From positions 150,230-214,229 of the IMG/VR virus record IMGVR_UViG_3300031251_000001: DNA of 64,000 bases, one strand, 5' to 3'. The notes beneath the pieces were generated by a model that was not told the DNA's origin, made no database searches, and was given only the letters and a program-made list of their open reading frames with translations. Position 1 is the first letter of the stretch; each line of letters begins with the position of its first letter. Shown here piece after piece: positions 4,156 through 63,932 of this stretch. Both the position numbers and the translations under genes were made by a program.

Positions 4156-5655
4156 TTACATGAAGAAGCCGCGAACCGCCACTGAACCTTGGATGACCTG
4201 TGAGGCAGTAGCGGTGCCAACCGGCATACGCAGGATGACCGCGAAGTTCTTACCGGCGAAGGTGGGTATGGGGGTCTCGAAGGAGACGTTGATGTCAGGA
4301 GCATTGGCACCGATAGCGGCACCGACAGGAAGCTGGTGCGTGCCGAATGCAGTACGCAGGTGAGCACCCGTCGACAAATTGGCCGAGGCACCGTTATGGC
4401 CCAGGCCCCAGAACAGAAGGCTGGGTGTGGTGGCCACGATGGCACCGGTATTCCAGCAGGTGGCATAAACGCCGGTACACATGAAGGTGTAGGGCGAGGG
4501 CACGGTGAAGCCAAAGAGCACGTAATCGGTGGCGGCACCGGCAACCGCAGCGAAGGAGTAGAGACCGTCCTTGGTGGTGTAACCGGCGACGGTGTTGGAC
4601 AGGGTCGCATTGGCGGGAGCGGCGGAATTGGCGAAGGTCGACGTCTGGGTGTAAGCGGTCGGGCTCATGTGCCCACCCTGACCCAGGAGCGGCATGTGGT
4701 AGGCCAACGGCATGTTGATGGCCCAGTCCTTGCAGCTGACGACCACGTCACCGATGACTGTCTGCTGTGCTGTCAGGGTTGCTGAGGCATTGCAGTTGCG
4801 GAAGAAGACCGGGATGTGGGTGACGGCGTTGAACTTGGCGGCAGTGTAAGGTACACGATAAGTAGCGTAGGCAATGATTGCCCCGGTGGTGGCATCCTGA
4901 ATCTGGAAGTCAGCCCGGTCGTCGCTCATGATGATGTCAAAGACATAGAAGCGACCGTTCACCAGCAAGTTGCCGGCGGCACCTGAGCTGTTATCCGCTG
5001 GACCATTGAGAGTAAGAGCGATTTCTGTTTCACCGACTGAATTGAAATTAACGACGGCGACCACTGTCTGATTGCTCTTCTCGCGGAAGTAAGCACCGTT
5101 GGGAATGGCACCCGTGCTGATGGCCGTCGCCGGGATACCAAAGCCAAAGTCGGTCTGACCGTTGGCGTAACTGGTGATCTGCAGACGAGCACGGAAATGC
5201 AGTGGCCCGAAAGCGATCTTGGAAAACATCTGCTGACTGACGATCATGGCACCCGTGGCGGTGGTCAGCGTCGAGTTGGCGTTCAGCGTGATGCCGGTAG
5301 CAGCCTGCGTGACAGTCTGCGTTGTAACCGTGTTGGTCCAGATCTGGGAGTTCTGGGTAGCGCCTTCGATGTTGTCACGGAAGACGATGTTCTCCAGGGC
5401 CTGCCTGGAATTACCCAGGCGATCGACGCGGAGCGAAGCCAACCATGACTCGTCGGCATAACCGCCGATGGGAATCGCGATCGGCCCGCTGGCTCCGACC
5501 GGGGAGCGACTGACACGGGGAATAGGCCGACCCAGGTGGTCTACCAGGATGGAGTCGAGCAGGCCGTACGTGCTGCTCTGCTGGAAGTCAGCCCCGGCGT
5601 TGTTGGGGCGTCCTGCCATCTGCAGATTACCGGCACCGACTTGTACTCCGAACAT
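4156..5655 (-). CDS. putative tail/tail-fibre-associated protein
   Basis: 499 aa, Thr/Ala/Gly- and beta-rich; AGGAG RBS; structural-gene context. Confidence 0.6.
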   Translation of the reverse strand: MFGVQVGAGNLQMAGRPNNAGADFQQSSTYGLLDSILVDHLGRPIPRVSRSPVGASGPIAIPIGGYADESWLASLRVDRLGNSRQALENIVFRDNIEGATQNSQIWTNTVTTQTVTQAATGITLNANSTLTTATGAMIVSQQMFSKIAFGPLHFRARLQITSYANGQTDFGFGIPATAISTGAIPNGAYFREKSNQTVVAVVNFNSVGETEIALTLNGPADNSSGAAGNLLVNGRFYVFDIIMSDDRADFQIQDATTGAIIAYATYRVPYTAAKFNAVTHIPVFFRNCNASATLTAQQTVIGDVVVSCKDWAINMPLAYHMPLLGQGGHMSPTAYTQTSTFANSAAPANATLSNTVAGYTTKDGLYSFAAVAGAATDYVLFGFTVPSPYTFMCTGVYATCWNTGAIVATTPSLLFWGLGHNGASANLSTGAHLRTAFGTHQLPVGAAIGANAPDINVSFETPIPTFAGKNFAVILRMPVGTATASQVIQGSVAVRGFFM

Positions 5656-8243: not shown

Positions 8244-8259
8244 CAAAATACGTATTTTG
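8244..8259. promoter_or_regulatory. 16-bp palindrome CAAAATACGTATTTTG, copy 1
   Basis: Exact, intergenic. Confidence 0.85.
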
Positions 8260-27859: not shown

Positions 27860-28423
27860 CGACTGGAAGGAGGCCCGACGTGGTAGAGGCTTGGCTAGTA
27901 CTCCTCGACTCACCCACGTCAGGCCATGGATCTATTTAGCGGTGGCATCCGCCAGGGCTTGGAGGACTTGATTGACGAAGTCAGGGGAGCTGGTATTGAA
28001 GTCGAGAGCCAAGAGCTGACAGCGTGGATCACGCAGCAGCGAGGCCAGGGCAACGAGGTCAGACAGGTCTATAGTGACGTTGGCTTTCATGGGATAACAA
28101 CGTCCTCGGGGCAACTGCCGGCACCGCAGCTATCCTCACCACTTGCCGGGTTGGGAACCACGGCGGCGTGAACGTAAGGCTCGGAGAACGACTGCGTCTC
28201 CAGAGCCTTGGTGAGCATGTCACGAATGGCTACAAGACCCTCACGGGTGGTAGCCAAGCGGAACCTGTGCTGAAGGTTGCCGAAAGAGCTGGTCTCGATC
28301 TCTAGCGTTGGGCCGTAGGCATCGAAGACGCGAATGGTGGCACCACTATTACCCACGTGCAGGTAGATCTCGGTGGCGGGCGTTTCGACTTTTTTACTGT
28401 CTTGGGACATGGTGACCTCTAAG

Positions 28424-28495
28424 AGCCGGGGGCAAGATTTGAACTTACGACCTCGTGGTTATGAGCCACGCGAGCTACCACTGCTCCACCCCGGT
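28424..28495 (-). tRNA. tRNA-Met(CAT), initiator-like, no encoded CCA
   Basis: ACCGGGG TG GAGC AGTGGTA GCTC G CGTGG CTCATAA CCACG AGGTC GTAAG TTCAAAT CTTGC CCCCGGC T folds as a cloverleaf. Confidence 0.93.
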
Positions 28496-31295: not shown

Positions 31296-32003
31296 TTATT
31301 TTGACACTTTTGCTTTGGTACTCGGCGGTGACGAGGCATTGACATCTCCAATGACGAGCCAGTTGATGGACAGGGCGGAGCAGAAGAAGCCCAGGAGCCA
31401 ACCACCGATGCAGTCGGTCGGGTAGTGGACGCCGAGCATGACGCGACTGGTGCAGACCAAGGCGATACCAAAGAAGGTAAGGCTGACGATGGTCCTGAAC
31501 ACGGCGTAGTTGATGTCGTACTCACTCCGACCTCGGGCCTTGAGCACCCTGTCGGCACGGATGTAGGCGACACGCAGAACGGTCCACCAGAAGGCAACAG
31601 CAGCGGAAGCATGGCTACTGGGGAAGGAGTAACCGCCCTCCTCGGTCAGGTGTGAGACGATGCTAGGTCGATCGCGTTGAACGATGAGCTTCCAGGCCAA
31701 GTCGAAGATGAACGCCAGTGCGACAGCGATGAAGGCAGGTCTGGGGTCAGGCCGATCGTTGCTATTGGTGGGATCGACTGCGCAATAGAGCATGTAGATC
31801 AGCATGGCAAAACAGACCGTGGCGGCCGAGGCCCAGGAGGTGATATCCCGAGCCACGCTGGCCAGCGTGCTGTTGGTAATAGGGTGCAGCCAGGTGAGGA
31901 TGGCGTCATCGAATCCCTGCGTCCAGCCACTCTTGACAGCGATGGCCAAGAAACCGAAGAGGAAGGCAAGTACCCAGAGCTGCGTCGTGTGTTTGTTGTT
32001 CAT
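31296..32003 (-). CDS. PAP2-family membrane phosphatase
   Basis: KLIVQRDRP, SFPSSH, SRVMLGVHYPTD motifs; TM helices. Confidence 0.93.
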   Translation of the reverse strand: MNNKHTTQLWVLAFLFGFLAIAVKSGWTQGFDDAILTWLHPITNSTLASVARDITSWASAATVCFAMLIYMLYCAVDPTNSNDRPDPRPAFIAVALAFIFDLAWKLIVQRDRPSIVSHLTEEGGYSFPSSHASAAVAFWWTVLRVAYIRADRVLKARGRSEYDINYAVFRTIVSLTFFGIALVCTSRVMLGVHYPTDCIGGWLLGFFCSALSINWLVIGDVNASSPPSTKAKVSK

Positions 32004-32084
32004 GTTTGTCCTTGGGATGATCCCGTTTGACTTGGCCAGGAGTAACCCCGGCCGTCGACCACATACCAGTACCCGGTCGTGGTG
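32004..32084 (-). CRISPR. putative minimal-repeat array A (ACGRCCGGG, 25-nt period)
   Basis: ACGACCGGG and ACGGCCGGG 25 nt apart, plus a degenerate AAACGGG about 25 nt further. Confidence 0.45.
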
Positions 32085-32150
32085 CGTTGTGCCGCCGAGT
32101 ACCCACCAGGAGCACCCTAAGCAGCGGTAGGCCTACCGGTGGCCCCGTGA
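32085..32150 (-). ncRNA. 66-nt structured scaffold element, copy A
   Basis: TCACGGGGCCACCGGTAGGCCTACCGCTGCTTAGGGTGCTCCTGGTGGGTACTCGGCGGCACAACG. Confidence 0.8.
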
Positions 32151-32421
32151 ACTGACTACTTGCTCTGGATGTTACAGCGGGCATCCCAGAACAGCAAGAT
32201 GACGATGGTGACGACCAGGCCAATGATGCCGGCCGTGCCCCAGTAATAGTCGAAGCTGGAGTCAAACCAGATCGCTGTCATGCAGAGCATGCAGGCTAGC
32301 ATGGAGAGCGTGAACGCTGCGTATTTGGCTGGTGGATCTGAAGGAATTGGCTTGTTAAAAGCATCGCCCAGCAACCTGCGTAGCTGGGCGTCCTTGTCGA
32401 AGTGAGGCATCGATAGCTCCG

Positions 32422-32874
32422 TCATGCGGTATTATTTTCGGGTGCGAGCCCCAGCGGAACGAAAGAGTGATCGTCAGGCGGCGGTGCAGCAACAGGGGCT
32501 GGTGCCGGCGGCTTGACGGGGGCTGCGGGTTGATTACTGAGTTTGAGTGGTGGGGTAGTCGATTGGCCTGATCGTCGGCTACCCAGGATGCCGATGCCGA
32601 CAGCTCCACCCATCGCTGCGGCCGGGCCAAAGAGCTTGAGCCCCCGCGAGAGAAGACCAGCCGTCTTGCCCAGTCCCATGCCGGTGTTGAGCAAGGCCCT
32701 GCGAAGCTGCCAGCCGGTGTAGAGTTGCTCCACGACGTCGGTGGCTTCCTTCTTCTCTTCGCCTACCTTGTCGGGCAGGGTGATGTCCTTGGGTGTGTGT
32801 TCCTGCCATCGCTTAGCCATCTCGGGCTTCTGAGAATACATCCATCTGCGCTGGGCCTTCGACTTAAACGGCAT
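32422..32874 (-). CDS. conserved phage protein
   Basis: N-terminal MPFKSKAQRRWMY...AKRWQEHTP...LPDKV motif; Gly/Pro-rich tail. Confidence 0.65.
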   Translation of the reverse strand: MPFKSKAQRRWMYSQKPEMAKRWQEHTPKDITLPDKVGEEKKEATDVVEQLYTGWQLRRALLNTGMGLGKTAGLLSRGLKLFGPAAAMGGAVGIGILGSRRSGQSTTPPLKLSNQPAAPVKPPAPAPVAAPPPDDHSFVPLGLAPENNTA

Positions 32875-32996
32875 GACATATCTCCATTTGACCCGGTACG
32901 CTTATCCTAACCCCGGCTCGTGTTGCTTAGCCATATCTAGGTCCCCCGGTGCGGCAATTCCTTCCTTCCGGATCCAATGCAAGCCCGGCGGCGATG
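32875..32996 (-). repeat. irregular CCGG(G) array B
   Basis: CCGG at 32893, 32913, 32946, 32968, 32985; spacing irregular. Confidence 0.3.
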
Positions 32997-33062
32997 CGTT
33001 GTGCCGGCGAGCGTCCACCAGGGACGCCCTAACCAGCTGTGGGCCTACCGGTGGCCCCGTGA
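32997..33062 (-). ncRNA. 66-nt scaffold element, copy B
   Basis: TCACGGGGCCACCGGTAGGCCCACAGCTGGTTAGGGCGTCCCTGGTGGACGCTCGCCGGCACAACG. Confidence 0.8.
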
Positions 33063-33466
33063 CTTCAGTCTAACAAACGGGCGGCTGCCCATGCGGTGCT
33101 GAATGAAGAATCATGTCCTCCAGTCGGAGGTTGACGTCGTCGAGGTAGACCGGGCTAAAGCGGATGCGAGCTTCCTCTTTGGTGCCGTAGCTCGACTGGA
33201 CAGGCGGGTGCTGAGAGAGTTGCTGCTCCTGAACTCGCACCCAAGGCAAACCTCGCAGCTCATCGGGGAGCTTCTCGTAGTAAAGCCGGGAAGACCACTT
33301 CACCGGCGTCAACCACACTAGCTTGCCGTTCTCCTTCGACTCAAAGGTGGCGCCCTCGTAGACCATAAAGGTGCCACTTCGGAAGGCCATGATGGCGGTC
33401 ACCGGTCCCACGCCACATCTGATCTCGGTGGCCAACCGCATGGTGGCCACCGTACGACGGTGCGGG

Positions 33467-34270
33467 TTAAGCGAGATCGCCTTGGTCCTGGTCGGAAGGA
33501 ACAGGCCCGTGATCATTGCTACCAGGCTCCCCAGCAGGCTTCGGCGGTTCGACATGAGTTGCTCTCTTTTCCAAGTCAGCCAGCACGGGAGTGGCGACAG
33601 GGTTATGGGTCTTGTTCAATCTTAACTTAGACAAGGCAGCGCTGAGGTTGGAGGTGCCCTTCTCCTGGAGGCGACGAGCCATCACCTCTTCGCTGCCGGC
33701 ATTGGGGGTGACGGTGGTTTTCTCCTGGCGAATGACTTTCACCCGTGCTCGACTCTGATCATTATCGGCTTCTTTCAGGATCTCGCCAAACGCTTCATGC
33801 GTTGCTTGCTCCTCAAAGACACTCTGTTCCTTGGCGTCCTTACGACGCTGCACACTGACAGGTCCATTCAGGGTGTAGTCGAGAAGCTCGTGACTGTGGC
33901 ATCCCTGGGTGTACTCCCCTTTAGGGAGTGGGTGATCTTTACCTGTGATCTTCAGGGTGCGGAACTGGTTCTCCATCCGCGTCATCGCTGCCCTGACGTG
34001 CTCCTTAAACTCGGCAAAGGTGCCGACAAAGGCGTTGATGTGCACATCCGTCTCATTGGTCACGATGGCCACCGGTTCCTCGCCGGCAGGCACTGCAGGA
34101 AGATCAGCGACCGGTGTGATAGACGGCACCTTCACGGTAGGCAGATAAAGCGGAATGCCGGGACCGTCACCCACCCCGCAGGTAATCCCGAAGTAGAAGA
34201 TGTGCTTGATTGGACCCTTGGGTGGCTTCACCTCGCTGAATATCTCTGGATGCTCGAAGTGATTGCTCAT
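33467..34270 (-). CDS. hypothetical protein
   Basis: GGGGAG RBS, 267 aa. Confidence 0.6.
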   Translation of the reverse strand: MSNHFEHPEIFSEVKPPKGPIKHIFYFGITCGVGDGPGIPLYLPTVKVPSITPVADLPAVPAGEEPVAIVTNETDVHINAFVGTFAEFKEHVRAAMTRMENQFRTLKITGKDHPLPKGEYTQGCHSHELLDYTLNGPVSVQRRKDAKEQSVFEEQATHEAFGEILKEADNDQSRARVKVIRQEKTTVTPNAGSEEVMARRLQEKGTSNLSAALSKLRLNKTHNPVATPVLADLEKRATHVEPPKPAGEPGSNDHGPVPSDQDQGDLA

Positions 34271-35550
34271 ACTTACTCCCCTGGTTACTGGTATCTCTCG
34301 GCCCGCTCCCGACTCATCACGTAAAGCGACTCGCTCTGCTCGGTGGCACTGACTACCACCGTAAAGCTGCAGTCCTTGACGAAGCCCGAGCTGTTGAGCA
34401 GCCCTGGCCCTTTTGTATCCACTGCGTCATGGTCTGTATAGTCGATTATCTCGACGCCGTTACAGACCATGTGCGGAGAGCAGGGGGCAGCTGAGCCGTG
34501 GTGATTCCAGGTGCTGGCGTTCTGGAAGCGGATCAGGGTGCGGTTATGATCCGACAGCACCAGCATTTCTTTAGCTACGATGCTGTACGACTGACGATTG
34601 GGCAGGTTGAGCCAGGCGCGTGGGTTCGACATCGTGAGAGCGATGTTGAGATAGTTATGCCTCTTGCCGTCCTTGCTCACGTTAGCCTTGAAGGCCCCGA
34701 TGATGACCAAGAAGATCGCTACGAAGCACATGGCGAAGAACCAGAGGATGCTGACAGCGTCCATGCTTACCCCTTGAGATGGAAGACCTTGATCAACTCC
34801 TGTCGCAGTTCTGGGTTGGCCTCCAGCACCTGGAGAGTAGTCTCCTGATCGGCAACAAGCAACTCCAACAAGGTGGTAGCCCACTTGACGACATACTCCT
34901 GCTTTGACATCAGCAGGTTGTCGAACTCGGTCGCACAGATGCCACACTGGCTGCGGTGGTCGCAGGTGGCCTTTCCACCCCCGACGAACTTGAGACCGAC
35001 GTCGGAGGGGGCCGGAGTTGACCAACTGACCGGTTGCTTAAACTGTTCAACCACCTGAACCGCCTCATTCTTGCGAGCACGACAAGGCGACTTCATCTCC
35101 GCCGGGACAATGAAATCACCACAGCGCTTGCACCTGACGCACTGACCCTGGCCTGGCGGGTGCGACACAGTACACCGCTCCATGCCCGGTTCGTGCGGTA
35201 AATTGAAAGGATGTGGTTCGCTGACGCCGAGTTCAGATTTGATTTCTTTACACTCCCATGTTTTCTTGTTCGAGTTGTAGTTGTACCAGTGCTCATGCAC
35301 CGATGCCGGCTCGTCGAAGGTGAAGAGGAGCGACACCTCTTTGGGATCCTCGATGTCGAGGTGGAAAGTAGCGGAATGAGCATGGATGCCGTGGGAGACG
35401 GCAGCGTCCACGTTAATAAATGATGACGTGGAGGAATGGTCCGTAACCCTAGACAGGGTACGCACGGTGACTCGTACCTTCTTGGTGTCGGGCCAGATCG
35501 GAAAATGGAAGAAGTAACGGCTGAGTGGCATGGTGGCTCCTGTGGAGGTG

Positions 35551-35889
35551 TTACTTATGATCTTTGACCAGCTGTTCACACTGCTGGGCATAGGTCTTGC
35601 CAATGAACTGCTGCTGGCGTAGAAATCCGAGCTTGGCTCTCGATGTCATCTTCTCCCAGAGCCGGGCTATCATGGGCCTGATCTTATCCAGGCCGACGCC
35701 AGATCGGAAGCGGAAACGACCCTCGGACAGGTCCCCCGTCTCCTCCATGACTCCACCAAGCTCTTCGGGCAGCTGATCACCACCGTCACAATCGATGTCA
35801 GAGTACATATTGACGATGCGTTCAGCGGTGAACTTGCTAGGTACGTTATTAACCCCTTGTGAGGGGTAAGGCGAGGCGTAGATAGGCAT
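35551..35889 (-). CDS. hypothetical protein
   Basis: Start MPIYASPY after AGGAG. Confidence 0.6.
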   Translation of the reverse strand: MPIYASPYPSQGVNNVPSKFTAERIVNMYSDIDCDGGDQLPEELGGVMEETGDLSEGRFRFRSGVGLDKIRPMIARLWEKMTSRAKLGFLRQQQFIGKTYAQQCEQLVKDHK

Positions 35890-35903
35890 GCTTGCTCCTG
35901 GTT

Positions 35904-35919
35904 CAAAATACGTATTTTG
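35904..35919. promoter_or_regulatory. 16-bp palindrome, copy 5
   Basis: Exact; directly at the end of array C. Confidence 0.85.
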
Positions 35920-36079
35920 GGTTCGTGTCTCCGCCCCTGCTTCGTGCTGGTGGACTCCACCTGCTGTGACAAGCCCGACTTGACTCCCTGCTACGAGGTA
36001 GCCAGATCGGCTCACCTGTTGCGAGCATTGGCATCTCCGCCCCTGCCCGTGCGGGAAGAGCATCAACACCCTGCTCGCT
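35920..36079 (-). CRISPR. putative minimal-repeat array C ((RG)CAGG x6)
   Basis: Plus-strand cctg at 36070, 36042, 36015, 35987, 35960, 35936 (periods 28, 27, 28, 27, 24). Confidence 0.6.
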
Positions 36080-36145
36080 CGTTGTGCCAGCGACCCGCCA
36101 CCAGGGCGAACCTAACCAGCTGTAGGCCTAGCAGAGGCCCCGTGA
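36080..36145 (-). ncRNA. 66-nt scaffold element, copy C
   Basis: TCACGGGGCCTCTGCTAGGCCTACAGCTGGTTAGGTTCGCCCTGGTGGCGGGTCGCTGGCACAACG. Confidence 0.8.
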
Positions 36146-36150
36146 ATCGA

Positions 36151-36627
36151 TCAATGACTCGGTGTACGATGCTTCAGCTCAGCCCAGACGTTAGCCGGGG
36201 TCCAGTGGCTCTGTTCCCCTGTCTGATCGAGCGTAGCAATCAACTCGTCCAAGTCGTACCAGGCCCAGCCGTCGCACTTGTCCGGCTCCTTGTTGACCGG
36301 CTCTCCGCCGATGTACTCGGCATACACCCAGTAGGTGATGTGGTTGACTCGCGGTCGATGATCGCTGACGCCCAGGATAGCAGGACAAAACTCAATGTCC
36401 AGATCAGTGCAGACCTGGAGGCCTGTCTCTTCGAGGACCTCACGGTGAACAGCATCCATGATGGTCTCACCATTCTCGACATGCCCACCCGGCAGAGCGA
36501 TGCAGCCTGGTCCGCGTTTGCACGTCATGGAGCGACGGCCGGCCAGGAACTTGCCCTCTTTGTGAATCAAGATGCCCACCCCGGAAGTGGGTGGGCGACC
36601 AAGCAGAACGGTCTTCTCGTCGGTCAT
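36151..36627 (-). CDS. Nudix hydrolase (NUDT15/MutT-like)
   Basis: Nudix box GGHVENGETIMDAVHREVLEETGL; EPVNKEPDKCDGWAW. Confidence 0.92.
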   Translation of the reverse strand: MTDEKTVLLGRPPTSGVGILIHKEGKFLAGRRSMTCKRGPGCIALPGGHVENGETIMDAVHREVLEETGLQVCTDLDIEFCPAILGVSDHRPRVNHITYWVYAEYIGGEPVNKEPDKCDGWAWYDLDELIATLDQTGEQSHWTPANVWAELKHRTPSH

Positions 36628-52435: not shown

Positions 52436-52439
52436 GTGT

Positions 52440-52530
52440 GTTTCCTTCGGGGCTACGGTGTCCTGACTCGTTGATGTGCGACGAGCCTTACCTGACTCGC
52501 CGCTATTGGGAACGAACTCCCTGACAGATG
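52440..52530 (-). CRISPR. putative minimal-repeat array D (CGAGTCAGG, 29-nt period)
   Basis: Plus-strand cctgac at 52462, 52491, 52520; 20-nt spacers. Confidence 0.65.
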
Positions 52531-52596
52531 CGTTGTGCCGGCGACCACCCACCAGGAGTGCCCTGACCGGCTGTAGGCGTGTCAGACGCCCCGTGA
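52531..52596 (-). ncRNA. 66-nt scaffold element, copy D
   Basis: TCACGGGGCGTCTGACACGCCTACAGCCGGTCAGGGCACTCCTGGTGGGTGGTCGCCGGCACAACG. Confidence 0.8.
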
Positions 52597-52601
52597 ACGG
52601 A

Positions 52602-52913
52602 TTACTTGCCGTGGATCTTAGCTTCATTCATGCGAATGATCTCGTCGACGGTCATGGCACTGCGCTTGACGTTGCATTCAGCACAGGCCCAGACGAGGTT
52701 CTCACGTTCGTTGGTGCCGCCCAGGCTCAGTGGAAGGATATGTTCCACGGTTCGGCAATCGGGCGGCTGGGGGTTGGTGTTGGGCGGGTAGACCACCATG
52801 ACTTTGTCACACCAGAAGCAGAGGTCGGACTGAGGTCCTTGCTCCAGCATTTTCCGGCGTGCCTTCTGGCGTCTACCCGACTCGTTGCGCTTCCGTCTCC
52901 TCGGTGCGATCAT
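52602..52913 (-). CDS. small HNH endonuclease
   Basis: CFWC...TVEHILPLSLGGTNERENLVWACAECNVKR. Confidence 0.9.
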   Translation of the reverse strand: MIAPRRRKRNESGRRQKARRKMLEQGPQSDLCFWCDKVMVVYPPNTNPQPPDCRTVEHILPLSLGGTNERENLVWACAECNVKRSAMTVDEIIRMNEAKIHGK

Positions 52914-57200: not shown

Positions 57201-57512
57201 TCAAAGCGAAGGCAGGCAAGCGTGGGCGACGTCGGAGGTGAAGAGCTCTCCTGGGCCGTTGCCTTCGGTGTCACGAGAAGCGTAGAGATGGACGTCGTTG
57301 TCGAGGATGATGACCAGAGGACGATTATCCCAGCGCATGTCGGTTGCCTCCTTCTTGGTCATGTACCTGACGTGCTTGATGGTGCGATCACGCAGGAGAT
57401 CAGTAGCAACAGCGGTCCAGTAGGTTTCACGCTGCTTAGCGTTGGAGAGGTCGTATTGCTTTCTGTGGTGAGTAACGATGGATGGCATGAGGTTGTTCCT
57501 GAGAGTTGACAT
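57201..57512 (-). CDS. hypothetical protein
   Basis: ASRDTEGNGPGELF motif; follows array E. Confidence 0.6.
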   Translation of the reverse strand: MSTLRNNLMPSIVTHHRKQYDLSNAKQRETYWTAVATDLLRDRTIKHVRYMTKKEATDMRWDNRPLVIILDNDVHLYASRDTEGNGPGELFTSDVAHACLPSL

Positions 57513-57642
57513 ACTGGTATTGCGTGCCCGTCACGACAGATCTGGCAAGGTGCCCGTCCGGAGGACGATACGGTACATGCCCGCCCTTGAAAGGTCGGGG
57601 CATGGACCCGTCCTCGGAGTGACGGCCAATACCGTCCCTGTT
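57513..57642 (-). CRISPR. putative minimal-repeat array E (GRCGGGCA, 26-27-nt period)
   Basis: Plus-strand cccg at 57527, 57553, 57580, 57607 and cctg at 57637. Confidence 0.6.
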
Positions 57643-57708
57643 CGTTGTGCCGACGCGTGCCCACCAGGAGCACGCTAATCAGCTGTAGGCCTGACGGAGG
57701 CCCCGTGT
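57643..57708 (-). ncRNA. 66-nt scaffold element, copy E
   Basis: ACACGGGGCCTCCGTCAGGCCTACAGCTGATTAGCGTGCTCCTGGTGGGCACGCGTCGGCACAACG. Confidence 0.8.
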
Positions 57709-58529
57709 GCTTGATTGTTAGAACCTTGGTCTAGGCAGTTCCTTTGATTCTTCCACAGTCGGCTCAGGTGTGGGTTGGTGCCGGGCCTCCAGGGCGGAAA
57801 TGCGACTTGATAGCGACTCATTCACGATCGCTTGCTCGGAGATCTTGTTCTCGATGCGGATGTGTTGAATGGTGTGAATGACCAGGTAACCCATGGCGAA
57901 CCAGAAGATGAAATCAAACATGTGTTCCTTAGTTGATACTGGGTTTACCTGCCACACGGCGTAACACCGTGGTCAGGGCCTCATTGGTGATGTCGGCTCG
58001 GTCGGGGTCAGTCACCTCGCGGCAACCATCCTCGACGATAACGATGTCATGCTCGCAATGGTCAGCGAGGAAGCGAAAGATCGGGGCAGTCTCGCCGCCA
58101 TCGCCCATGACCGAGAACTCGGCCCCGCTGATGTGCAGCAAGTAGGCCAGAGAATCCGACTCAGCCAGTACCCGACGCAGGAACTCTTCGCTCACGCGAC
58201 TGGACTGGGGCGAGTCGAGATTGCAGGTCTTGCAGCGGTAACTCATGTCGACAGACATAGTGACTCCTCACAGTTCGCCACGTGATTGCAACAGTTTGAT
58301 CATGGCGGGATGAATCCAGAACACCTTGTTGCATTGGCAGGTGATGGCGATCCGTGTACCTACGGGCAAATGGGCCAACTCGTCGTTGCCGCCACGATCA
58401 GTCTCCGCCTTGTCGATGGTAGTCATGCGGTGATCTGCCGTGCTGAGCGTACGACATAGGGAGTGCCACTGACTGCGGACATAGCCCATGAACTTGGTGT
58501 TCGATAGTGTTTCTTTCATCGAGTCTCCT

Positions 58530-58612
58530 TAATTAGCCTGTTCGCCATTTCCCATCCAGCAATCCGGTCAACTGGTCCCATCCGGATTCAGGTTATGCCA
58601 CTCCCACCCGAT
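58530..58612 (-). CRISPR. putative minimal-repeat array G (GGRTGGGA, 26-nt period)
   Basis: Plus-strand ccca at 58551, 58577, 58603; 18-nt spacers. Confidence 0.65.
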
Positions 58613-58678
58613 CGTTGTGTCAACGCCAATCCACCAGGGATGAGCTCATTGACGGTAGGCGTGATGGACGCCCCGTAG
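58613..58678 (-). ncRNA. 66-nt scaffold element, copy G
   Basis: CTACGGGGCGTCCATCACGCCTACCGTCAATGAGCTCATCCCTGGTGGATTGGCGTTGACACAACG. Confidence 0.8.
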
Positions 58679-58738
58679 CCGTGAGGCCTCATGCGGTGTA
58701 AGCTGATCGCAGGCAATAATGCCACCAGAGGACCTCGC

Positions 58739-62233: not shown

Positions 62234-63529
62234 TTATTCGCCTGCAATTACAGGCTCTTCGACGGCCTTGCCCATGTACAGGAACTCGACCCCGGCCTCA
62301 GTGCAATGGCGCTCAAGTTCCCCCTTGAGCTGGAACCACGGGAAGCGGGGCACGAAGTTCTGGATCGAGTCGTCGTACTTAATGGAAGAGACATCGTTCC
62401 GCAGGGCGAACTGCACGACCTGGCAGCAGGTCTGCAGGATAAAGGTTTTGATACGGTTGTTGTGCTTCCTGGCCCAAAGATCGGCGTCACGCAGGAGACG
62501 CTCCTTCTTGGCCTTGGGGATGCGCATCTCGTGTTTGAGGTCCTGGGACTGGCGGTGCTGCCGGCGTCCGTACTGATAGCACCAGTCACGCACACGGTCA
62601 GCATTAACGACCCAGGGCTCCTCACGGTCCTGGAGGATGCCATAGAGGAGCGACTCCTCAGTAGTGCTGATGTTGAAGAAGCGCTCCTTCTCCAGCTTCT
62701 CCCTGGTCTTGCGTGGGGCATTGACCACGAGCTTGCACATCAGTCGATTGACGGGTCGGGAGGGCTTATTGCCTTGCGGTATATTACTCCTGTGATCACC
62801 CTCGTTGGCTCGCATCTGGTAGAGAGCGATCTCATTGCACTCAGCCTCTCCGTCGAGCACCTGCTGCAGCACTCCGAGCTGACGCCAGTATTGCGACTTA
62901 GAACCTGACAACCGCAGCGTGGTGTGCTCCTTCTGCCCCATCAGACGCATCTTGACACCGAAGGCTTCAGGGAGCTTTTCTTTAGCGGGTAACTTCACCA
63001 GCTTGCTGTCATTGGTGGAGTAAGGCTGCGGGTAGCGGAACGACGGCAGTGATTGCTTGCCGGTCCAGATCACCTCATAGCGGGCAGCGGCATAGATCTT
63101 CTGCACCAGGTTCTCGGCGATGGCCCGCATGGCAGGGTGGATCCGGAAACTAGCCGTCTCCTGGTAGAGATAAGGCCTATCCCAGGTGGGCATTTTCGCC
63201 ATCGTGCCATCACGAACGATGTCACGGAGGAACATCTGGCGGATGAGGAAGTTCTTGAGCCTGGTCGCTTCGGCGAACGAGTCGCGAAGCAAGGGCCGCA
63301 GGTCTTCCCAAGTGATGCCGTCAGGTGCAGTGACCGGGATGGTTATCGCAAAAGTGCGATAATCCCTCTTGTAGCACTTGTTGCAGATGAGCTTATCACC
63401 CTTGAGCTTCCAACCCTTGGGTATTTTAGCAGTGCCGTCTTTGCCCGGCTTGGACTTGCCCTTGTTGACGCAGCCCTCATTGGCGCAATACGTCTCCATC
63501 AGATTCGGTTTGGTTTCGACGATTGACAT
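62234..63529 (-). CDS. Cas12f/TnpB-like protein, predicted nuclease-dead and C-terminally truncated
   Basis: Colinear Cas12f-like blocks: TGKQSLPSFRYPQP, VLQQVLDGE, RFFNISTT (at RuvC-I GIDLG), bridge helix to QVVQFALRNDVSSIKYDD (RuvC-II), FPWFQLKGELERHCTEAGVEF; then stop. AAGGAG RBS. Confidence 0.72.
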   Translation of the reverse strand: MSIVETKPNLMETYCANEGCVNKGKSKPGKDGTAKIPKGWKLKGDKLICNKCYKRDYRTFAITIPVTAPDGITWEDLRPLLRDSFAEATRLKNFLIRQMFLRDIVRDGTMAKMPTWDRPYLYQETASFRIHPAMRAIAENLVQKIYAAARYEVIWTGKQSLPSFRYPQPYSTNDSKLVKLPAKEKLPEAFGVKMRLMGQKEHTTLRLSGSKSQYWRQLGVLQQVLDGEAECNEIALYQMRANEGDHRSNIPQGNKPSRPVNRLMCKLVVNAPRKTREKLEKERFFNISTTEESLLYGILQDREEPWVVNADRVRDWCYQYGRRQHRQSQDLKHEMRIPKAKKERLLRDADLWARKHNNRIKTFILQTCCQVVQFALRNDVSSIKYDDSIQNFVPRFPWFQLKGELERHCTEAGVEFLYMGKAVEEPVIAGE

Positions 63530-63597
63530 AAAAACTCCTTATTGGGAAGCGAAGACTCACCCCATCACGAAGAAAGCCACTGCACTATGCAGCGGCT

Positions 63598-63663
63598 CGT
63601 TGTACCGGCGAGTGTCCACCAGGGACACCCTAACCAGTGGTAGGCGGGATGGACGCCCCTTAG
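63598..63663 (-). ncRNA. 66-nt scaffold element, copy F (directly upstream of the Cas12f-like gene)
   Basis: CTAAGGGGCGTCCATCCCGCCTACCACTGGTTAGGGTGTCCCTGGTGGACACTCGCCGGTACAACG. Confidence 0.8.
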
Positions 63664-63932
63664 TTGATTGGCTGACCTGTGGGACCGAGGATGCTGCCTG
63701 GTTTGCGGACTTCCAGTTCAGCGGGATCAGGTGGCAGCTCAGGGACATTATCGAACAGACACAGATAGCTGGTGGGATGCTTGCCATTGATCAAGGGCAG
63801 CTTGTCCAGGTCGGTTTGCAGCTGGGCTTCAGGGTTAGGTATCCGTGCGACGGTGATTTTCTGCGGGATGACGTAGCCACCCATGGTGCAGGCCTGCCAG
63901 ATGCGATCATCGTGGTCAAAGACTTGCTCCAC
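63660..63932 (-). CDS. hypothetical protein
   Basis: 90-aa ORF whose stop codon overlaps scaffold copy F. Confidence 0.5.
   Translation of the reverse strand: MEQVFDHDDRIWQACTMGGYVIPQKITVARIPNPEAQLQTDLDKLPLINGKHPTSYLCLFDNVPELPPDPAELEVRKPGSILGPTGQPIN

What the first reader, a model, noticed from the sequence alone, without database searches (positions are those of the whole stretch)
35920..36079. Array C: six CAGG units at 24-28 nt spacing ending at the palindrome
Segments between CAGG cores: GTGTTGATGCTCTTCCCGCACGGG, GGCGGAGATGCCAATGCTCGCAA, TGAGCCGATCTGGCTACCTCGTAG, GAGTCAAGTCGGGCTTGTCACAG, TGGAGTCCACCAGCACGAAG, GGCGGAGACACGAACC. Units 2 and 6 share GCAGGGGCGGAGA, which suggests unit duplication or a shared seed.
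Basis: seen in the sequence. Interest (0 to 1): 0.75.

Follow-up and report, generated by a model that had tools for sequence, protein, structure and literature searches.

The report
Repeated partner sites for a hairpin loop
The six evenly spaced CAGG units are real: they are repeated copies of a short sequence that can base-pair with the loop of a conserved RNA hairpin just upstream, in a previously undescribed intergenic element found ten times in this uncultured giant soil phage.

Summary
On the minus strand, six CAGG cores lie 24-28 nt apart in a 261-nt non-coding gap between a NUDIX gene and an orphan gene. The window belongs to a 214-kb rhizosphere jumbo phage.

The array is the tail of a larger element. 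The gap begins with a ~70-nt module (hairpin P1, long hairpin P2 with invariant loop CCUGGUGG, tail ACAACG). This module occurs ten times in the genome, always on the sense strand, and its stems covary.

Each copy is followed by 1-7 short motifs about 27 nt apart. These motifs are the reverse complement of that copy's own P1 loop. Loop UCUGCUA goes with AGCAGG here; other copies pair UCCGUCA with GACGGG and UCCAUCA with GAUGGG. Own-loop complements occur 23 times, against 4.2 when loops are permuted among copies (0 of 20,000 permutations reach 23).

The geometry fits a classical H-type pseudoknot with several alternative closing strands. My best reading is a cis-acting structured RNA that affects the fate of the flanking mRNA; its function is inferred, not shown.

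No match was found in Rfam, IMG/VR, 185,579 prokaryote genomes or distant phage relatives.

The parts
36124..36140 (-). Hairpin P1 of element M4. The 5-bp stem is 36136-36140 paired with 36124-36128, and the 7-nt loop UCUGCUA is 36129-36135. In the pseudoknot reading, loop position 1 is L1 and positions 2-7 pair with the array units.
   Evidence: RNAalifold and pair counts on 6 and 10 paralogs; coordinates checked.
36086..36120 (-). Hairpin P2: 6 bp, a 2-nt bulge, then 8 bp. The loop region CCUGGUGG (36098-36105) is invariant in all ten copies.
   Evidence: Nine of its 14 pairs show compensatory changes, and 97% of cells are paired.
36080..36085 (-). Invariant single-stranded tail ACAACG. It would form the A-rich 3' end of pseudoknot loop L3.
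   Evidence: Invariant columns in alignment A4.
36069..36075 (-). Unit 1, AGCAGGG, 4 nt after the tail. It is the proximal pseudoknot closing strand.
   Evidence: duplex with P1 5' strand plus loop, -12.9 kcal/mol.
36039..36047 (-). Unit 2, GGCAGGGGC, with 9 contiguous pairs to GCCUCUGCU of P1.
   Evidence: -18.1 kcal/mol; beyond the 1st percentile of controls.
36015..36019 (-). Unit 3, ACAGG, a weak copy with only 4 pairs.
   Evidence: -7.3 kcal/mol; average for controls.
35986..35993 (-). Unit 4, UAGCAGGG, with 8 pairs covering the whole loop.
   Evidence: -15.1 kcal/mol.
35960..35965 (-). Unit 5, AGCAGG.
   Evidence: -10.3 kcal/mol.
35933..35941 (-). Unit 6, AGCAGGGGC, a duplicate of unit 2.
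   Evidence: -18.0 kcal/mol.
35904..35919 (.). The 16-bp palindrome CAAAATACGTATTTTG, one of 22 perfect copies in the genome. It is a separate element that happens to follow this array.
35887..35900 (-). Ribosome-binding site (CAGGAG, the seventh CAGG) and ATG of the 112-aa orphan gene (35551-35889).
36151..36627 (-). Upstream NUDIX hydrolase gene. Its TGA stop lies 9 nt before the run of four G that opens P1 (first paired G at 36140).
32004..32154 (-). Paralog M2: module plus (A/G)CCGG units; loop ACCGGUA.
32875..33066 (-). Paralog M3: module plus four own-loop-complement (N)CCGG units (a fifth CCGG 4-mer is also present); loop ACCGGUA.
52436..52600 (-). Paralog M5: module plus three GUCAGG units 29 nt apart; loop UCUGACA.
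57489..57712 (-). Paralog M6: module plus five (G)ACGGG units 24-27 nt apart; loop UCCGUCA.
58520..58682 (-). Paralog M10: module plus GAUGGG units; loop UCCAUCA. It lies at the head of a minus-strand unit, next to a divergent plus-strand gene.
63530..63667 (-). Paralog M8: module, then a terminator-like hairpin, then one GAUGGG unit; loop UCCAUCC.

Best explanation
Array C is the repeated 3' pairing strand of a pseudoknot-forming intergenic RNA element. The element is read on the minus (mRNA-sense) strand and begins 9 nt after the NUDIX stop codon. Its order is: hairpin P1 (5-bp stem, 7-nt loop UCUGCUA), a 3-nt linker, long hairpin P2 with an invariant loop, an invariant ACAACG tail, and then six units about 27 nt apart. 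The unit core (U)AGCAGG(GGC) is complementary to P1 loop positions 2-7, and in units 2 and 6 also to three stem nucleotides. Pairing the loop with the first unit gives a textbook H-type pseudoknot: L1 = 1 nt, S2 = 5-6 bp stacked on P1, and an A-rich L3 that carries P2. The further units are alternative closing strands kept by selection. Shown in silico: the family of ten copies, the covarying stems, the sense-strand specificity, the copy-specific loop/repeat complementarity, and the regular spacing. Inferred: that the pairing forms in RNA, and that the element acts in cis on its polycistronic mRNA, through processing or stability of the flanking cistrons, translation of the downstream gene, or read-through by the phage polymerase. 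In that reading the invariant P2 loop and tail would be the contact for a common phage or host factor. Why several partners are needed, and why they sit about 27 nt apart, is not explained.
For: (1) The 5' part of the gap has paralogs in the same genome. A covariance model finds ten copies at E = 1e-18 to 1e-31, all on the minus strand, and nothing else below E = 0.2. (2) On the ten copies, 96% of cells pair, against 35-49% when partners are slid. Ten pairs carry compensatory changes, and 0 of 500 shuffles reach this. (3) Many conserved G.U pairs, for example U35.G59 in 10 of 10 copies, would be A.C mismatches on the other strand, so the structure belongs to the sense strand. (4) The 5-mer complementary to each copy's own P1 loop occurs 23 times in its own downstream region. 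Permuting loops among copies gives 4.2 +/- 2.8, and 0 of 20,000 permutations reach 23. The same-sense, reversed and complement-only controls each give 1. Equally long upstream stretches give 0. (5) The core letters track the loop. A loop with U at position 3 goes with CAGG (M4, M5), C at position 3 with CGGG (M1-3, 6, 7, 9), and A at position 4 with UGGG (M8, M10). (6) The first complementary unit lies 4-7 nt after ACAACG in 9 of 10 copies. (7) 16 of 21 gaps between C-R-G-G motifs fall in 20-33 nt, against 2.1 +/- 1.5 in dinucleotide shuffles (0 of 2000). (8) Spacers between units are unrelated while the cores are kept, which argues for selection on the extra units. (9) M4 units 2, 6 and 4 give duplex energies of -18.1, -18.0 and -15.1 kcal/mol with P1, against a control mean of -7.8 and a 1st percentile of -16.1. 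(10) The region has no coding potential.
Against: There are no expression data: no RNA run could be listed and the phage is uncultured. All evidence comes from paralogs within one genome, because no independent relative was found, so relatedness may inflate some statistics. The whole-gap minimum-free-energy fold is not unusually stable (z = -1.43). In local folds the units tend to be paired within small hairpins rather than displayed (unpaired probability 0.33 against 0.51). Unit 3 of Array C pairs poorly. A single cis pseudoknot does not need six partners, and nothing explains the 27-nt period. In M1 and M4 the palindrome, a possible promoter, separates the array from the downstream gene, so the element could belong to the upstream transcript there, whereas M9 and M10 look like 5' leaders.
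Confidence: 0.6

Rival explanations
1. Multivalent pairing in trans. Each transcript carries one loop and several receptors with a private code, so copies of the same mRNA, or a processed module RNA and its mRNA, link into dimers or networks. The 27-nt spacing would leave room for one bulky module per receptor.
For: There are several receptors per loop. Distal units are often stronger than the proximal one (M4 units 2, 4 and 6; M6 unit 5; M3 unit 4). Seven different loop codes occur with almost no cross-matches between copies. A spacing of about 27 nt is compatible with steric exclusion.
Against: The proximal unit sits at a fixed, pseudoknot-compatible distance and should occupy the loop in cis. 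No biological purpose can be named, and there are no data on RNA abundance or assembly.
Confidence: 0.12
2. One reading: the array is cut at or near each core into RNAs of about 27 nt that carry seeds or guides. In a tracrRNA-like version, the P1 loop marks each cut site.
For: The layout is regular and repeat-spacer-like, with one upstream segment complementary to every repeat. Unit 2 with its spacer (GGCAGGGGCGGAGAUG, 16 nt) is perfectly antisense to the mRNA of a 903-aa gene at genome 75808-75823 (BLAST E = 0.008).
Against: The repeats are 5-9 nt, far too short for known repeat-processing systems. The spacers of the other nine arrays have only chance-level matches of 14 nt or less in the genome. 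No Rfam family matches. The repeat differs between arrays, so a common protein could not read it.
Confidence: 0.1
3. A DNA-level element. The units are iterons or half-sites for a DNA-binding protein (origin, partition or regulator), or the hairpins form in single-stranded DNA of a mobile or replication element.
For: Direct repeats at regular spacing next to a hairpin recall rolling-circle and iteron origins. Ten dispersed copies suggest mobility. An HNH endonuclease gene lies just upstream of M5.
Against: The core differs between copies and covaries with a hairpin loop, which points to nucleic-acid pairing rather than one protein. G.U pairs make the structure strand-specific. Cumulative GC skew rises steadily across the window with no turn at 36 kb. 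The conserved core is only 4-6 bp. Because 264 of 276 genes are on the minus strand, sense orientation cannot be separated from replication orientation, so a single-stranded DNA structure is not excluded.
Confidence: 0.08
4. There is no function beyond the first unit. The other units are neutral leftovers of tandem duplication, or the periodicity is chance.
For: Units 2 and 6, and pairs of units in M5, M6 and M7, share up to 13 nt, so duplication did occur. The genome-wide periodicity test for Array C alone gives only P of about 0.03.
Against: Spacers have diverged beyond recognition while the cores remain complementary to the copy's own loop in all ten elements. Spacing is regular across independent arrays. 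A change of loop would have to be followed in every unit, which neutral decay does not give.
Confidence: 0.07

Closest known systems
H-type pseudoknot leaders, especially the phage T4 gene 32 translational operator (from my own knowledge)
   Same: There is a structured 5' pseudoknot, followed by a run of short repeated motifs that reaches the ribosome-binding site of the next gene. The geometry is L1 = 1 nt, stacked stems and an A-rich L3.
   Different: Here the repeated motif is the pseudoknot's own closing strand, differs between copies and sits about 27 nt apart. In T4 the repeats are A/U-rich binding sites for gp32, not partners of the hairpin loop. No binding protein is known here.
tracrRNA anti-repeat pairing with CRISPR repeats (from my own knowledge)
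   Same: One upstream RNA segment is complementary to every member of a regularly spaced repeat series separated by unique spacers.
   Different: Complementarity is 5-9 nt rather than about 24 nt or more. The period is 27 nt rather than about 60-70 nt. No repeat hairpin or cas context was seen, the spacers have no targets, and each element has its own code.
Phage HK022 put RNA and phage T7 intercistronic RNase III sites (from my own knowledge)
   Same: These are conserved stem-loop modules of about 60-70 nt within phage polycistronic transcripts. They occur in several copies per genome, often directly after a stop codon, and act in cis on transcription or mRNA processing.
   Different: There is no sequence similarity and no Rfam match. 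Neither known element has a loop-complementary repeat array. P2 has 14 bp with a bulge, which is short for an RNase III site.
Modular intergenic repeats: pneumococcal BOX elements, REP/BIME, and T4-type PeSL cassettes (from my own knowledge)
   Same: They are dispersed intergenic elements with a conserved structured module and a variable number of internal repeat units, clustered among small accessory genes.
   Different: BOX and REP units are conserved in sequence across copies. Here only a 5-7 nt core is kept, and it covaries with a hairpin loop. No homolog was found outside this one phage genome.
CsrB/RsmZ-type protein-sponge RNAs (from my own knowledge)
   Same: They have many short G-rich motifs about 20-30 nt apart along a non-coding RNA.
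   Different: The defining GGA motif is absent from most unit cores here: the core is CAGG(G/U), or CGGG and UGGG in paralogs. The motif also changes from copy to copy, which a single protein would not tolerate.

Membership tests
H-type RNA pseudoknot | A hairpin loop pairs with a downstream single strand, with a short L1, stems able to stack, and an L3 long enough to cross S1. | tested here: met
   Loop position 1 is unpaired and positions 2-7 are complementary to a unit 4-7 nt after the ACAACG tail in 9 of 10 copies. L2 = 0, and L3 contains ACA, P2 and ACAACG. This is sequence evidence only; there is no probing.
H-type RNA pseudoknot | Covariation supports both stems. | tested here: met
   For P1 and P2, 96% of cells pair and 10 pairs show compensatory change. 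For S2, own-loop complements number 23, against 4.2 in permutations and 1 in sense or reversed controls.
CRISPR array | Near-identical repeats of about 23-50 nt alternate with unique spacers. | tested here: not met
   Only 4-9 nt are shared between units, and TRF and the repeat finder report no such repeat.
CRISPR array | The spacers match foreign or target DNA. | tested here: inconclusive
   Only self-genome matches could be tested. One 16-mer stands out and the rest are at chance level. The host is unknown.
CsrB/Rsm sponge RNA | Repeated A(N)GGA motifs, mostly in hairpin loops. | tested here: not met
   In Array C only unit 4 (CAGGGA) and the ribosome-binding-site copy (CAGGAG) have GGA in the core. 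Paralogs use CGGGC, CCGGG or GAUGGG. Units tend to be paired, not in loops.
Replication-origin or partition iterons | Several near-identical direct repeats of about 17-22 bp bound by one initiator, usually next to an A+T-rich region. | tested here: not met
   The conserved core is 5-7 nt and differs between the ten loci. There is no turn in GC skew at the site.
Intrinsic (rho-independent) terminator | A G+C-rich hairpin directly followed by a U tract. | tested here: not met
   P1 and P2 are followed by ACA and ACAACG, not by U runs. The scan finds no terminator in 35890-36150. True hairpin-plus-U terminators exist elsewhere in the genome.
Any Rfam 15 family | A match to a curated covariance model. 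| tested here: not met
   At gathering thresholds the window matches only the tRNA. At E up to 10, the stretch 31900-36300, which holds three elements, gives only three unrelated chance hits.
Protein-coding repeat | An open frame with gene-like codon usage and a period divisible by 3. | tested here: not met
   The gaps of 24, 27, 28, 27 and 28 shift the frame. Codon scores are far below those of genes in all six frames.

The most novel reading that the evidence does not exclude
The ten elements could form an 'addressed' RNA-RNA interaction system that has not been described. In it, a common scaffold (P2 loop and tail, read by one factor) carries a private 6-nt loop code. The array of matching receptors about 27 nt apart would then be used for something a single pseudoknot cannot do. 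Possibilities include homotypic assembly of specific phage mRNAs, stepwise hand-over of the module along the leader toward the next start codon, a renewable roadblock that re-forms on the next unit, or loop-guided cutting into RNAs of about 27 nt.
Probability: 0.25. Interest if true: 0.85.

Novelty: new variant of a known kind. Interest (0 to 1): 0.62.

Why it matters
Structured RNAs of uncultured jumbo phages are almost unexplored. This case gives a compact, testable RNA of about 95-270 nt with three unusual properties: ten copies in one genome, a loop code that differs between copies, and several selected partners for one loop at a fixed spacing. If the pairing is real, it points to a way of controlling or organising individual phage messages that is not in current catalogues of RNA elements. 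It would also supply a natural set of orthogonal loop-receptor pairs. The case also shows that a weak-looking 4-mer periodicity can be the visible edge of a long-range RNA interaction.

Tried and rejected
- **Close relatives for comparison.** Megablast and blastn of the locus against 50,697 phage records found nothing. Back-translated searches of IMG/VR with both flanking proteins found nothing. The 112-aa protein has no homolog among 5.8 billion proteins.
- **The palindrome in IMG/VR.** It gives only single chance hits.
- **A 19-base module pattern.** It gave no hit in IMG/VR. In the metagenome collection it matched the phage's own contig plus ten unrelated stretches, mostly coding-looking, that lack the upstream part of the module. 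A 23-base invariant pattern gave 0 hits in IMG/VR and in 185,579 prokaryote genomes.
- **Distant relatives.** The covariance model found nothing in Salmonella phage Arash, Vibrio phage D181 or Rhizobium phage RHph_Y65. These were chosen because their RNA polymerase beta-like protein is 26-31% identical.
- **Read data.** Laying contigs of two rhizosphere runs showed only the identical phage, with no variants in the array. No RNA run could be listed.
- **Ideas rejected.**
  - tRNA or tmRNA.
  - Sigma-70 promoter or intrinsic terminator in the gap.
  - A series of uniform ~27-nt hairpins: local folds differ between units and between copies.
  - A sigma-54 -24/-12 promoter in the GGCAC tail: no TTGC at the right distance, by inspection.
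  - Stop-codon read-through: only 12 codons remain open after the NUDIX stop.
  - Pairing of the invariant P2 loop with the array: a 13-nt complement exists in M4 only and is not conserved.
- **Literature.** One full-text search gave nothing relevant.

Full report
**Setting.** The window is the last 64 kb of a 214,229-bp virus record. CheckV rates the record complete. It was assembled from a rhizosphere metagenome, and a second rhizosphere sample holds the same phage at low depth. My own rough gene calling puts 264 of 276 genes on the minus strand. The phage encodes a 1674-aa RNA polymerase beta-like protein. Its nearest listed relatives are only about 30% identical: Salmonella phage Arash and some Vibrio phages, with Rhizobium phages further away. 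Nothing similar at the DNA level exists in the phage collection.

**The observation.** The finding lies in a 261-nt gap (35890-36150). The gap separates a NUDIX hydrolase gene (36151-36627, minus strand) from a 112-aa orphan gene (35551-35889, minus strand; no homolog).
- On the minus strand, CAGG occurs six times with gaps of 24, 27, 28, 27 and 28 nt. A seventh copy lies inside the ribosome-binding site.
- Five of the six cores are GCAGG and four are AGCAGG.
- No frame shows coding potential, and the gaps are not multiples of three.
- I scanned all 256 four-letter words and all spacing bands from 12 to 64 nt. A run this long appeared in 3% of Markov-simulated genomes. It is the only CAGG run of its kind in the genome.

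Taken alone, then, the array is real but only modestly significant.

**What surrounds it.** Reads laid on the locus and a sensitive self-BLAST showed that the first 70 nt of the gap have paralogs in other gaps of the same genome. Six copies aligned without indels and gave a two-hairpin consensus. A covariance model built from them recovered four more divergent copies. That makes ten elements, M1 to M10, and Array C belongs to M4.
- All ten are intergenic and on the minus strand. Eight lie in the last 32 kb or the first 5 kb of the record, mostly among small genes of unknown function.
- The module consists of P1 (5-bp stem, 7-nt loop), a 3-nt linker (A-C-A/C), P2 (6 bp, a 2-nt bulge, 8 bp, with an invariant CCUGGUGG loop region) and an invariant ACAAC(G) tail.
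- On the ten copies 96% of cells pair, against 35-49% for slid partners. Ten pairs show compensatory changes, and no shuffle of 500 reaches this.
- Conserved G.U pairs place the structure on the sense strand, which points to RNA.
- Rfam has no matching family.

**The key result.** In the first six copies, the region after the module carries C-R-G-G motifs at regular spacing. Sixteen of 21 gaps fall in 20-33 nt, against 2.1 +/- 1.5 in dinucleotide shuffles (0 of 2000). CGGG and CAGG are among the three most enriched four-letter words there, together with GGGC.

The motif differs between copies, and the difference follows the P1 loop:

| Copy | P1 loop | Unit core |
|---|---|---|
| M4 | UCUGCUA | (U)AGCAGG |
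| M5 | UCUGACA | (U)GUCAGG |
| M6 | UCCGUCA | (U)GACGGG |
| M1, M9 | UCCGACA | GUCGG |
| M2, M3 | ACCGGUA | (U)ACCGG |
| M7 | ACCGCAA | UGCGG |
| M8, M10 | UCCAUC(C/A) | GAUGG |

- The 5-mer complementary to a copy's own loop occurs 23 times downstream of that copy. It occurs 4.2 +/- 2.8 times when loops are permuted among copies, and 0 of 20,000 permutations reach 23.
- Off-diagonal counts are near zero, except between copies that share a loop.
- Same-sense, reversed-only and complement-only controls each give 1. Equally long upstream stretches give 0.

So the CAGG of Array C is simply the part of the complement that is common to its units. CAGG, rather than CGGG, appears because the M4 loop has U at its third position.

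**Geometry.** The first loop nucleotide is not covered by the complementarity, while the next six are. The first complementary unit begins 4-7 nt after the ACAACG tail in nine of ten copies. In M8, a hairpin is inserted before it. This is the layout of a classical H-type pseudoknot: L1 of one nucleotide, S2 of 5-6 bp stacking on P1, no L2, and an A-rich L3, which here carries P2 as an insert. The comparison with classical pseudoknots rests on established knowledge of such folds, not on a tool result. In Array C, units 2 and 6 extend the pairing into three stem nucleotides (9 bp, about -18 kcal/mol). Unit 4 covers the whole loop (8 bp, -15.1), units 1 and 5 are intermediate, and unit 3 is weak.

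**Selection.** Some units are recent duplicates: units 2 and 6 here, and pairs in M5, M6 and M7. Even so, the spacers between units are unrelated, while the cores stay complementary to the local loop. That argues against neutral leftovers of duplication.

**What it does.** This part is inferred.
- A minus-strand gene ends 0-13 nt before P1 in seven copies. M9 follows an intrinsic terminator, and M10 heads a minus-strand unit next to a divergent gene. The module is therefore not tied to upstream translation and can act as a leader.
- Downstream genes are unrelated to one another: ThyX-like and PAP2-like by inspection of their translations, and otherwise of unknown function.
- The invariant P2 loop and tail suggest a shared trans factor.
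- I commit to a cis-acting structured RNA that modulates processing, stability, read-through or translation of the flanking cistrons through a pseudoknot with alternative closing strands.
- I cannot explain why several partners at about 27 nt are required. Local folds show no uniform hairpin series, and the units are, if anything, more paired locally than the background.

**Rivals.** Four alternatives remain.
- Trans multimerisation through the extra receptors is not excluded.
The other nine arrays have no such matches.
- DNA iterons are unlikely, because the core differs between loci and covaries with a loop. A structure in single-stranded DNA cannot be excluded, because transcription and replication orientation are confounded in this genome.
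- Chance is excluded at the family level.

**Limits.** All comparative evidence comes from paralogs within one genome. No homolog was found in IMG/VR, in the metagenome collection beyond the phage's own contig, in 185,579 prokaryote genomes, or in three distant phage relatives. No RNA data exist.

**Verdict.** The array is the repeated partner strand of a hairpin loop in a new, ten-copy intergenic RNA element. I rate it a new variant of a known kind, pseudoknotted cis-acting phage RNA, with an unexplained multi-partner architecture that could prove to be more than that.

Noticed in passing
window 35904-35919, and 21 other sites genome-wide (in the window at 8244, 14990, 21936, 30447, 52939, 60328): The 16-bp A+T-rich palindrome CAAAATACGTATTTTG occurs 22 times perfectly, plus once with one mismatch, in a 57% G+C genome. 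Most copies lie 2-6 nt after a stop codon and 9-25 nt before the next start codon, and several lie just downstream of hairpin-plus-U terminators. The symmetry often extends to (A)TC...GA(T). It could be a promoter or operator of the phage's own polymerase, or an RNA hairpin. Elsewhere in IMG/VR it gives only single chance hits.
   Followed up: partly
genome 75808-75823 (outside the window; L001:1500-1515), inside a 903-aa minus-strand gene (genome 74092-76803): A 16-nt exact copy of unit 2 plus its spacer (GGCAGGGGCGGAGATG) lies on the opposite strand, so array RNA would be perfectly antisense to that mRNA. BLAST E = 0.008. It is the only such match among the ten arrays. The protein has no PHROG match.
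   Followed up: partly
window 63572-63590 (minus strand), within element M8: In M8 the module is followed, 2 nt after the ACAACG tail, by a terminator-like hairpin with a U-rich tail. In M9 (genome about 5170-5200) a classic terminator sits just upstream of the module. This bears on whether the module acts on termination.
   Followed up: no
window 52602-52850 (minus strand): An 82-aa free-standing HNH endonuclease-like gene lies directly upstream of element M5. This is a possible link to mobility of the elements, or it may be coincidence. The call is by inspection of the translation only.
   Followed up: no
genome 102635-107659 and 96994-100695 (outside the window): There are large RNA polymerase beta/beta'-like genes. 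The 1674-aa protein is about 30% identical to a protein of Salmonella phage Arash and about 26% identical to Rhizobium phage beta' proteins. This phage lineage has no close sequenced relative.
   Followed up: partly
window about 63416-63540 (genome 213645), and genome 87827: The all-4-mer periodicity scan found two other regular runs: TTGG five times at about 30-nt spacing near the end of the window, and CTTG seven times at about 15-nt spacing at genome 87.8 kb. The second is probably a coding tandem repeat.
   Followed up: no
window 28423-28495 (minus strand): A single tRNA-Met (CAU) gene is the only Rfam or ARAGORN hit in the window.
   Followed up: no
genome 121555-122499 and window 31296-32003 (minus strand): The genes downstream of elements M1 and M2 look like a flavin-dependent thymidylate synthase (ThyX, RHR...S...R motif) and a PAP2-type membrane phosphatase. 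Both calls are by inspection of the translations and were not checked against profile libraries.
   Followed up: no
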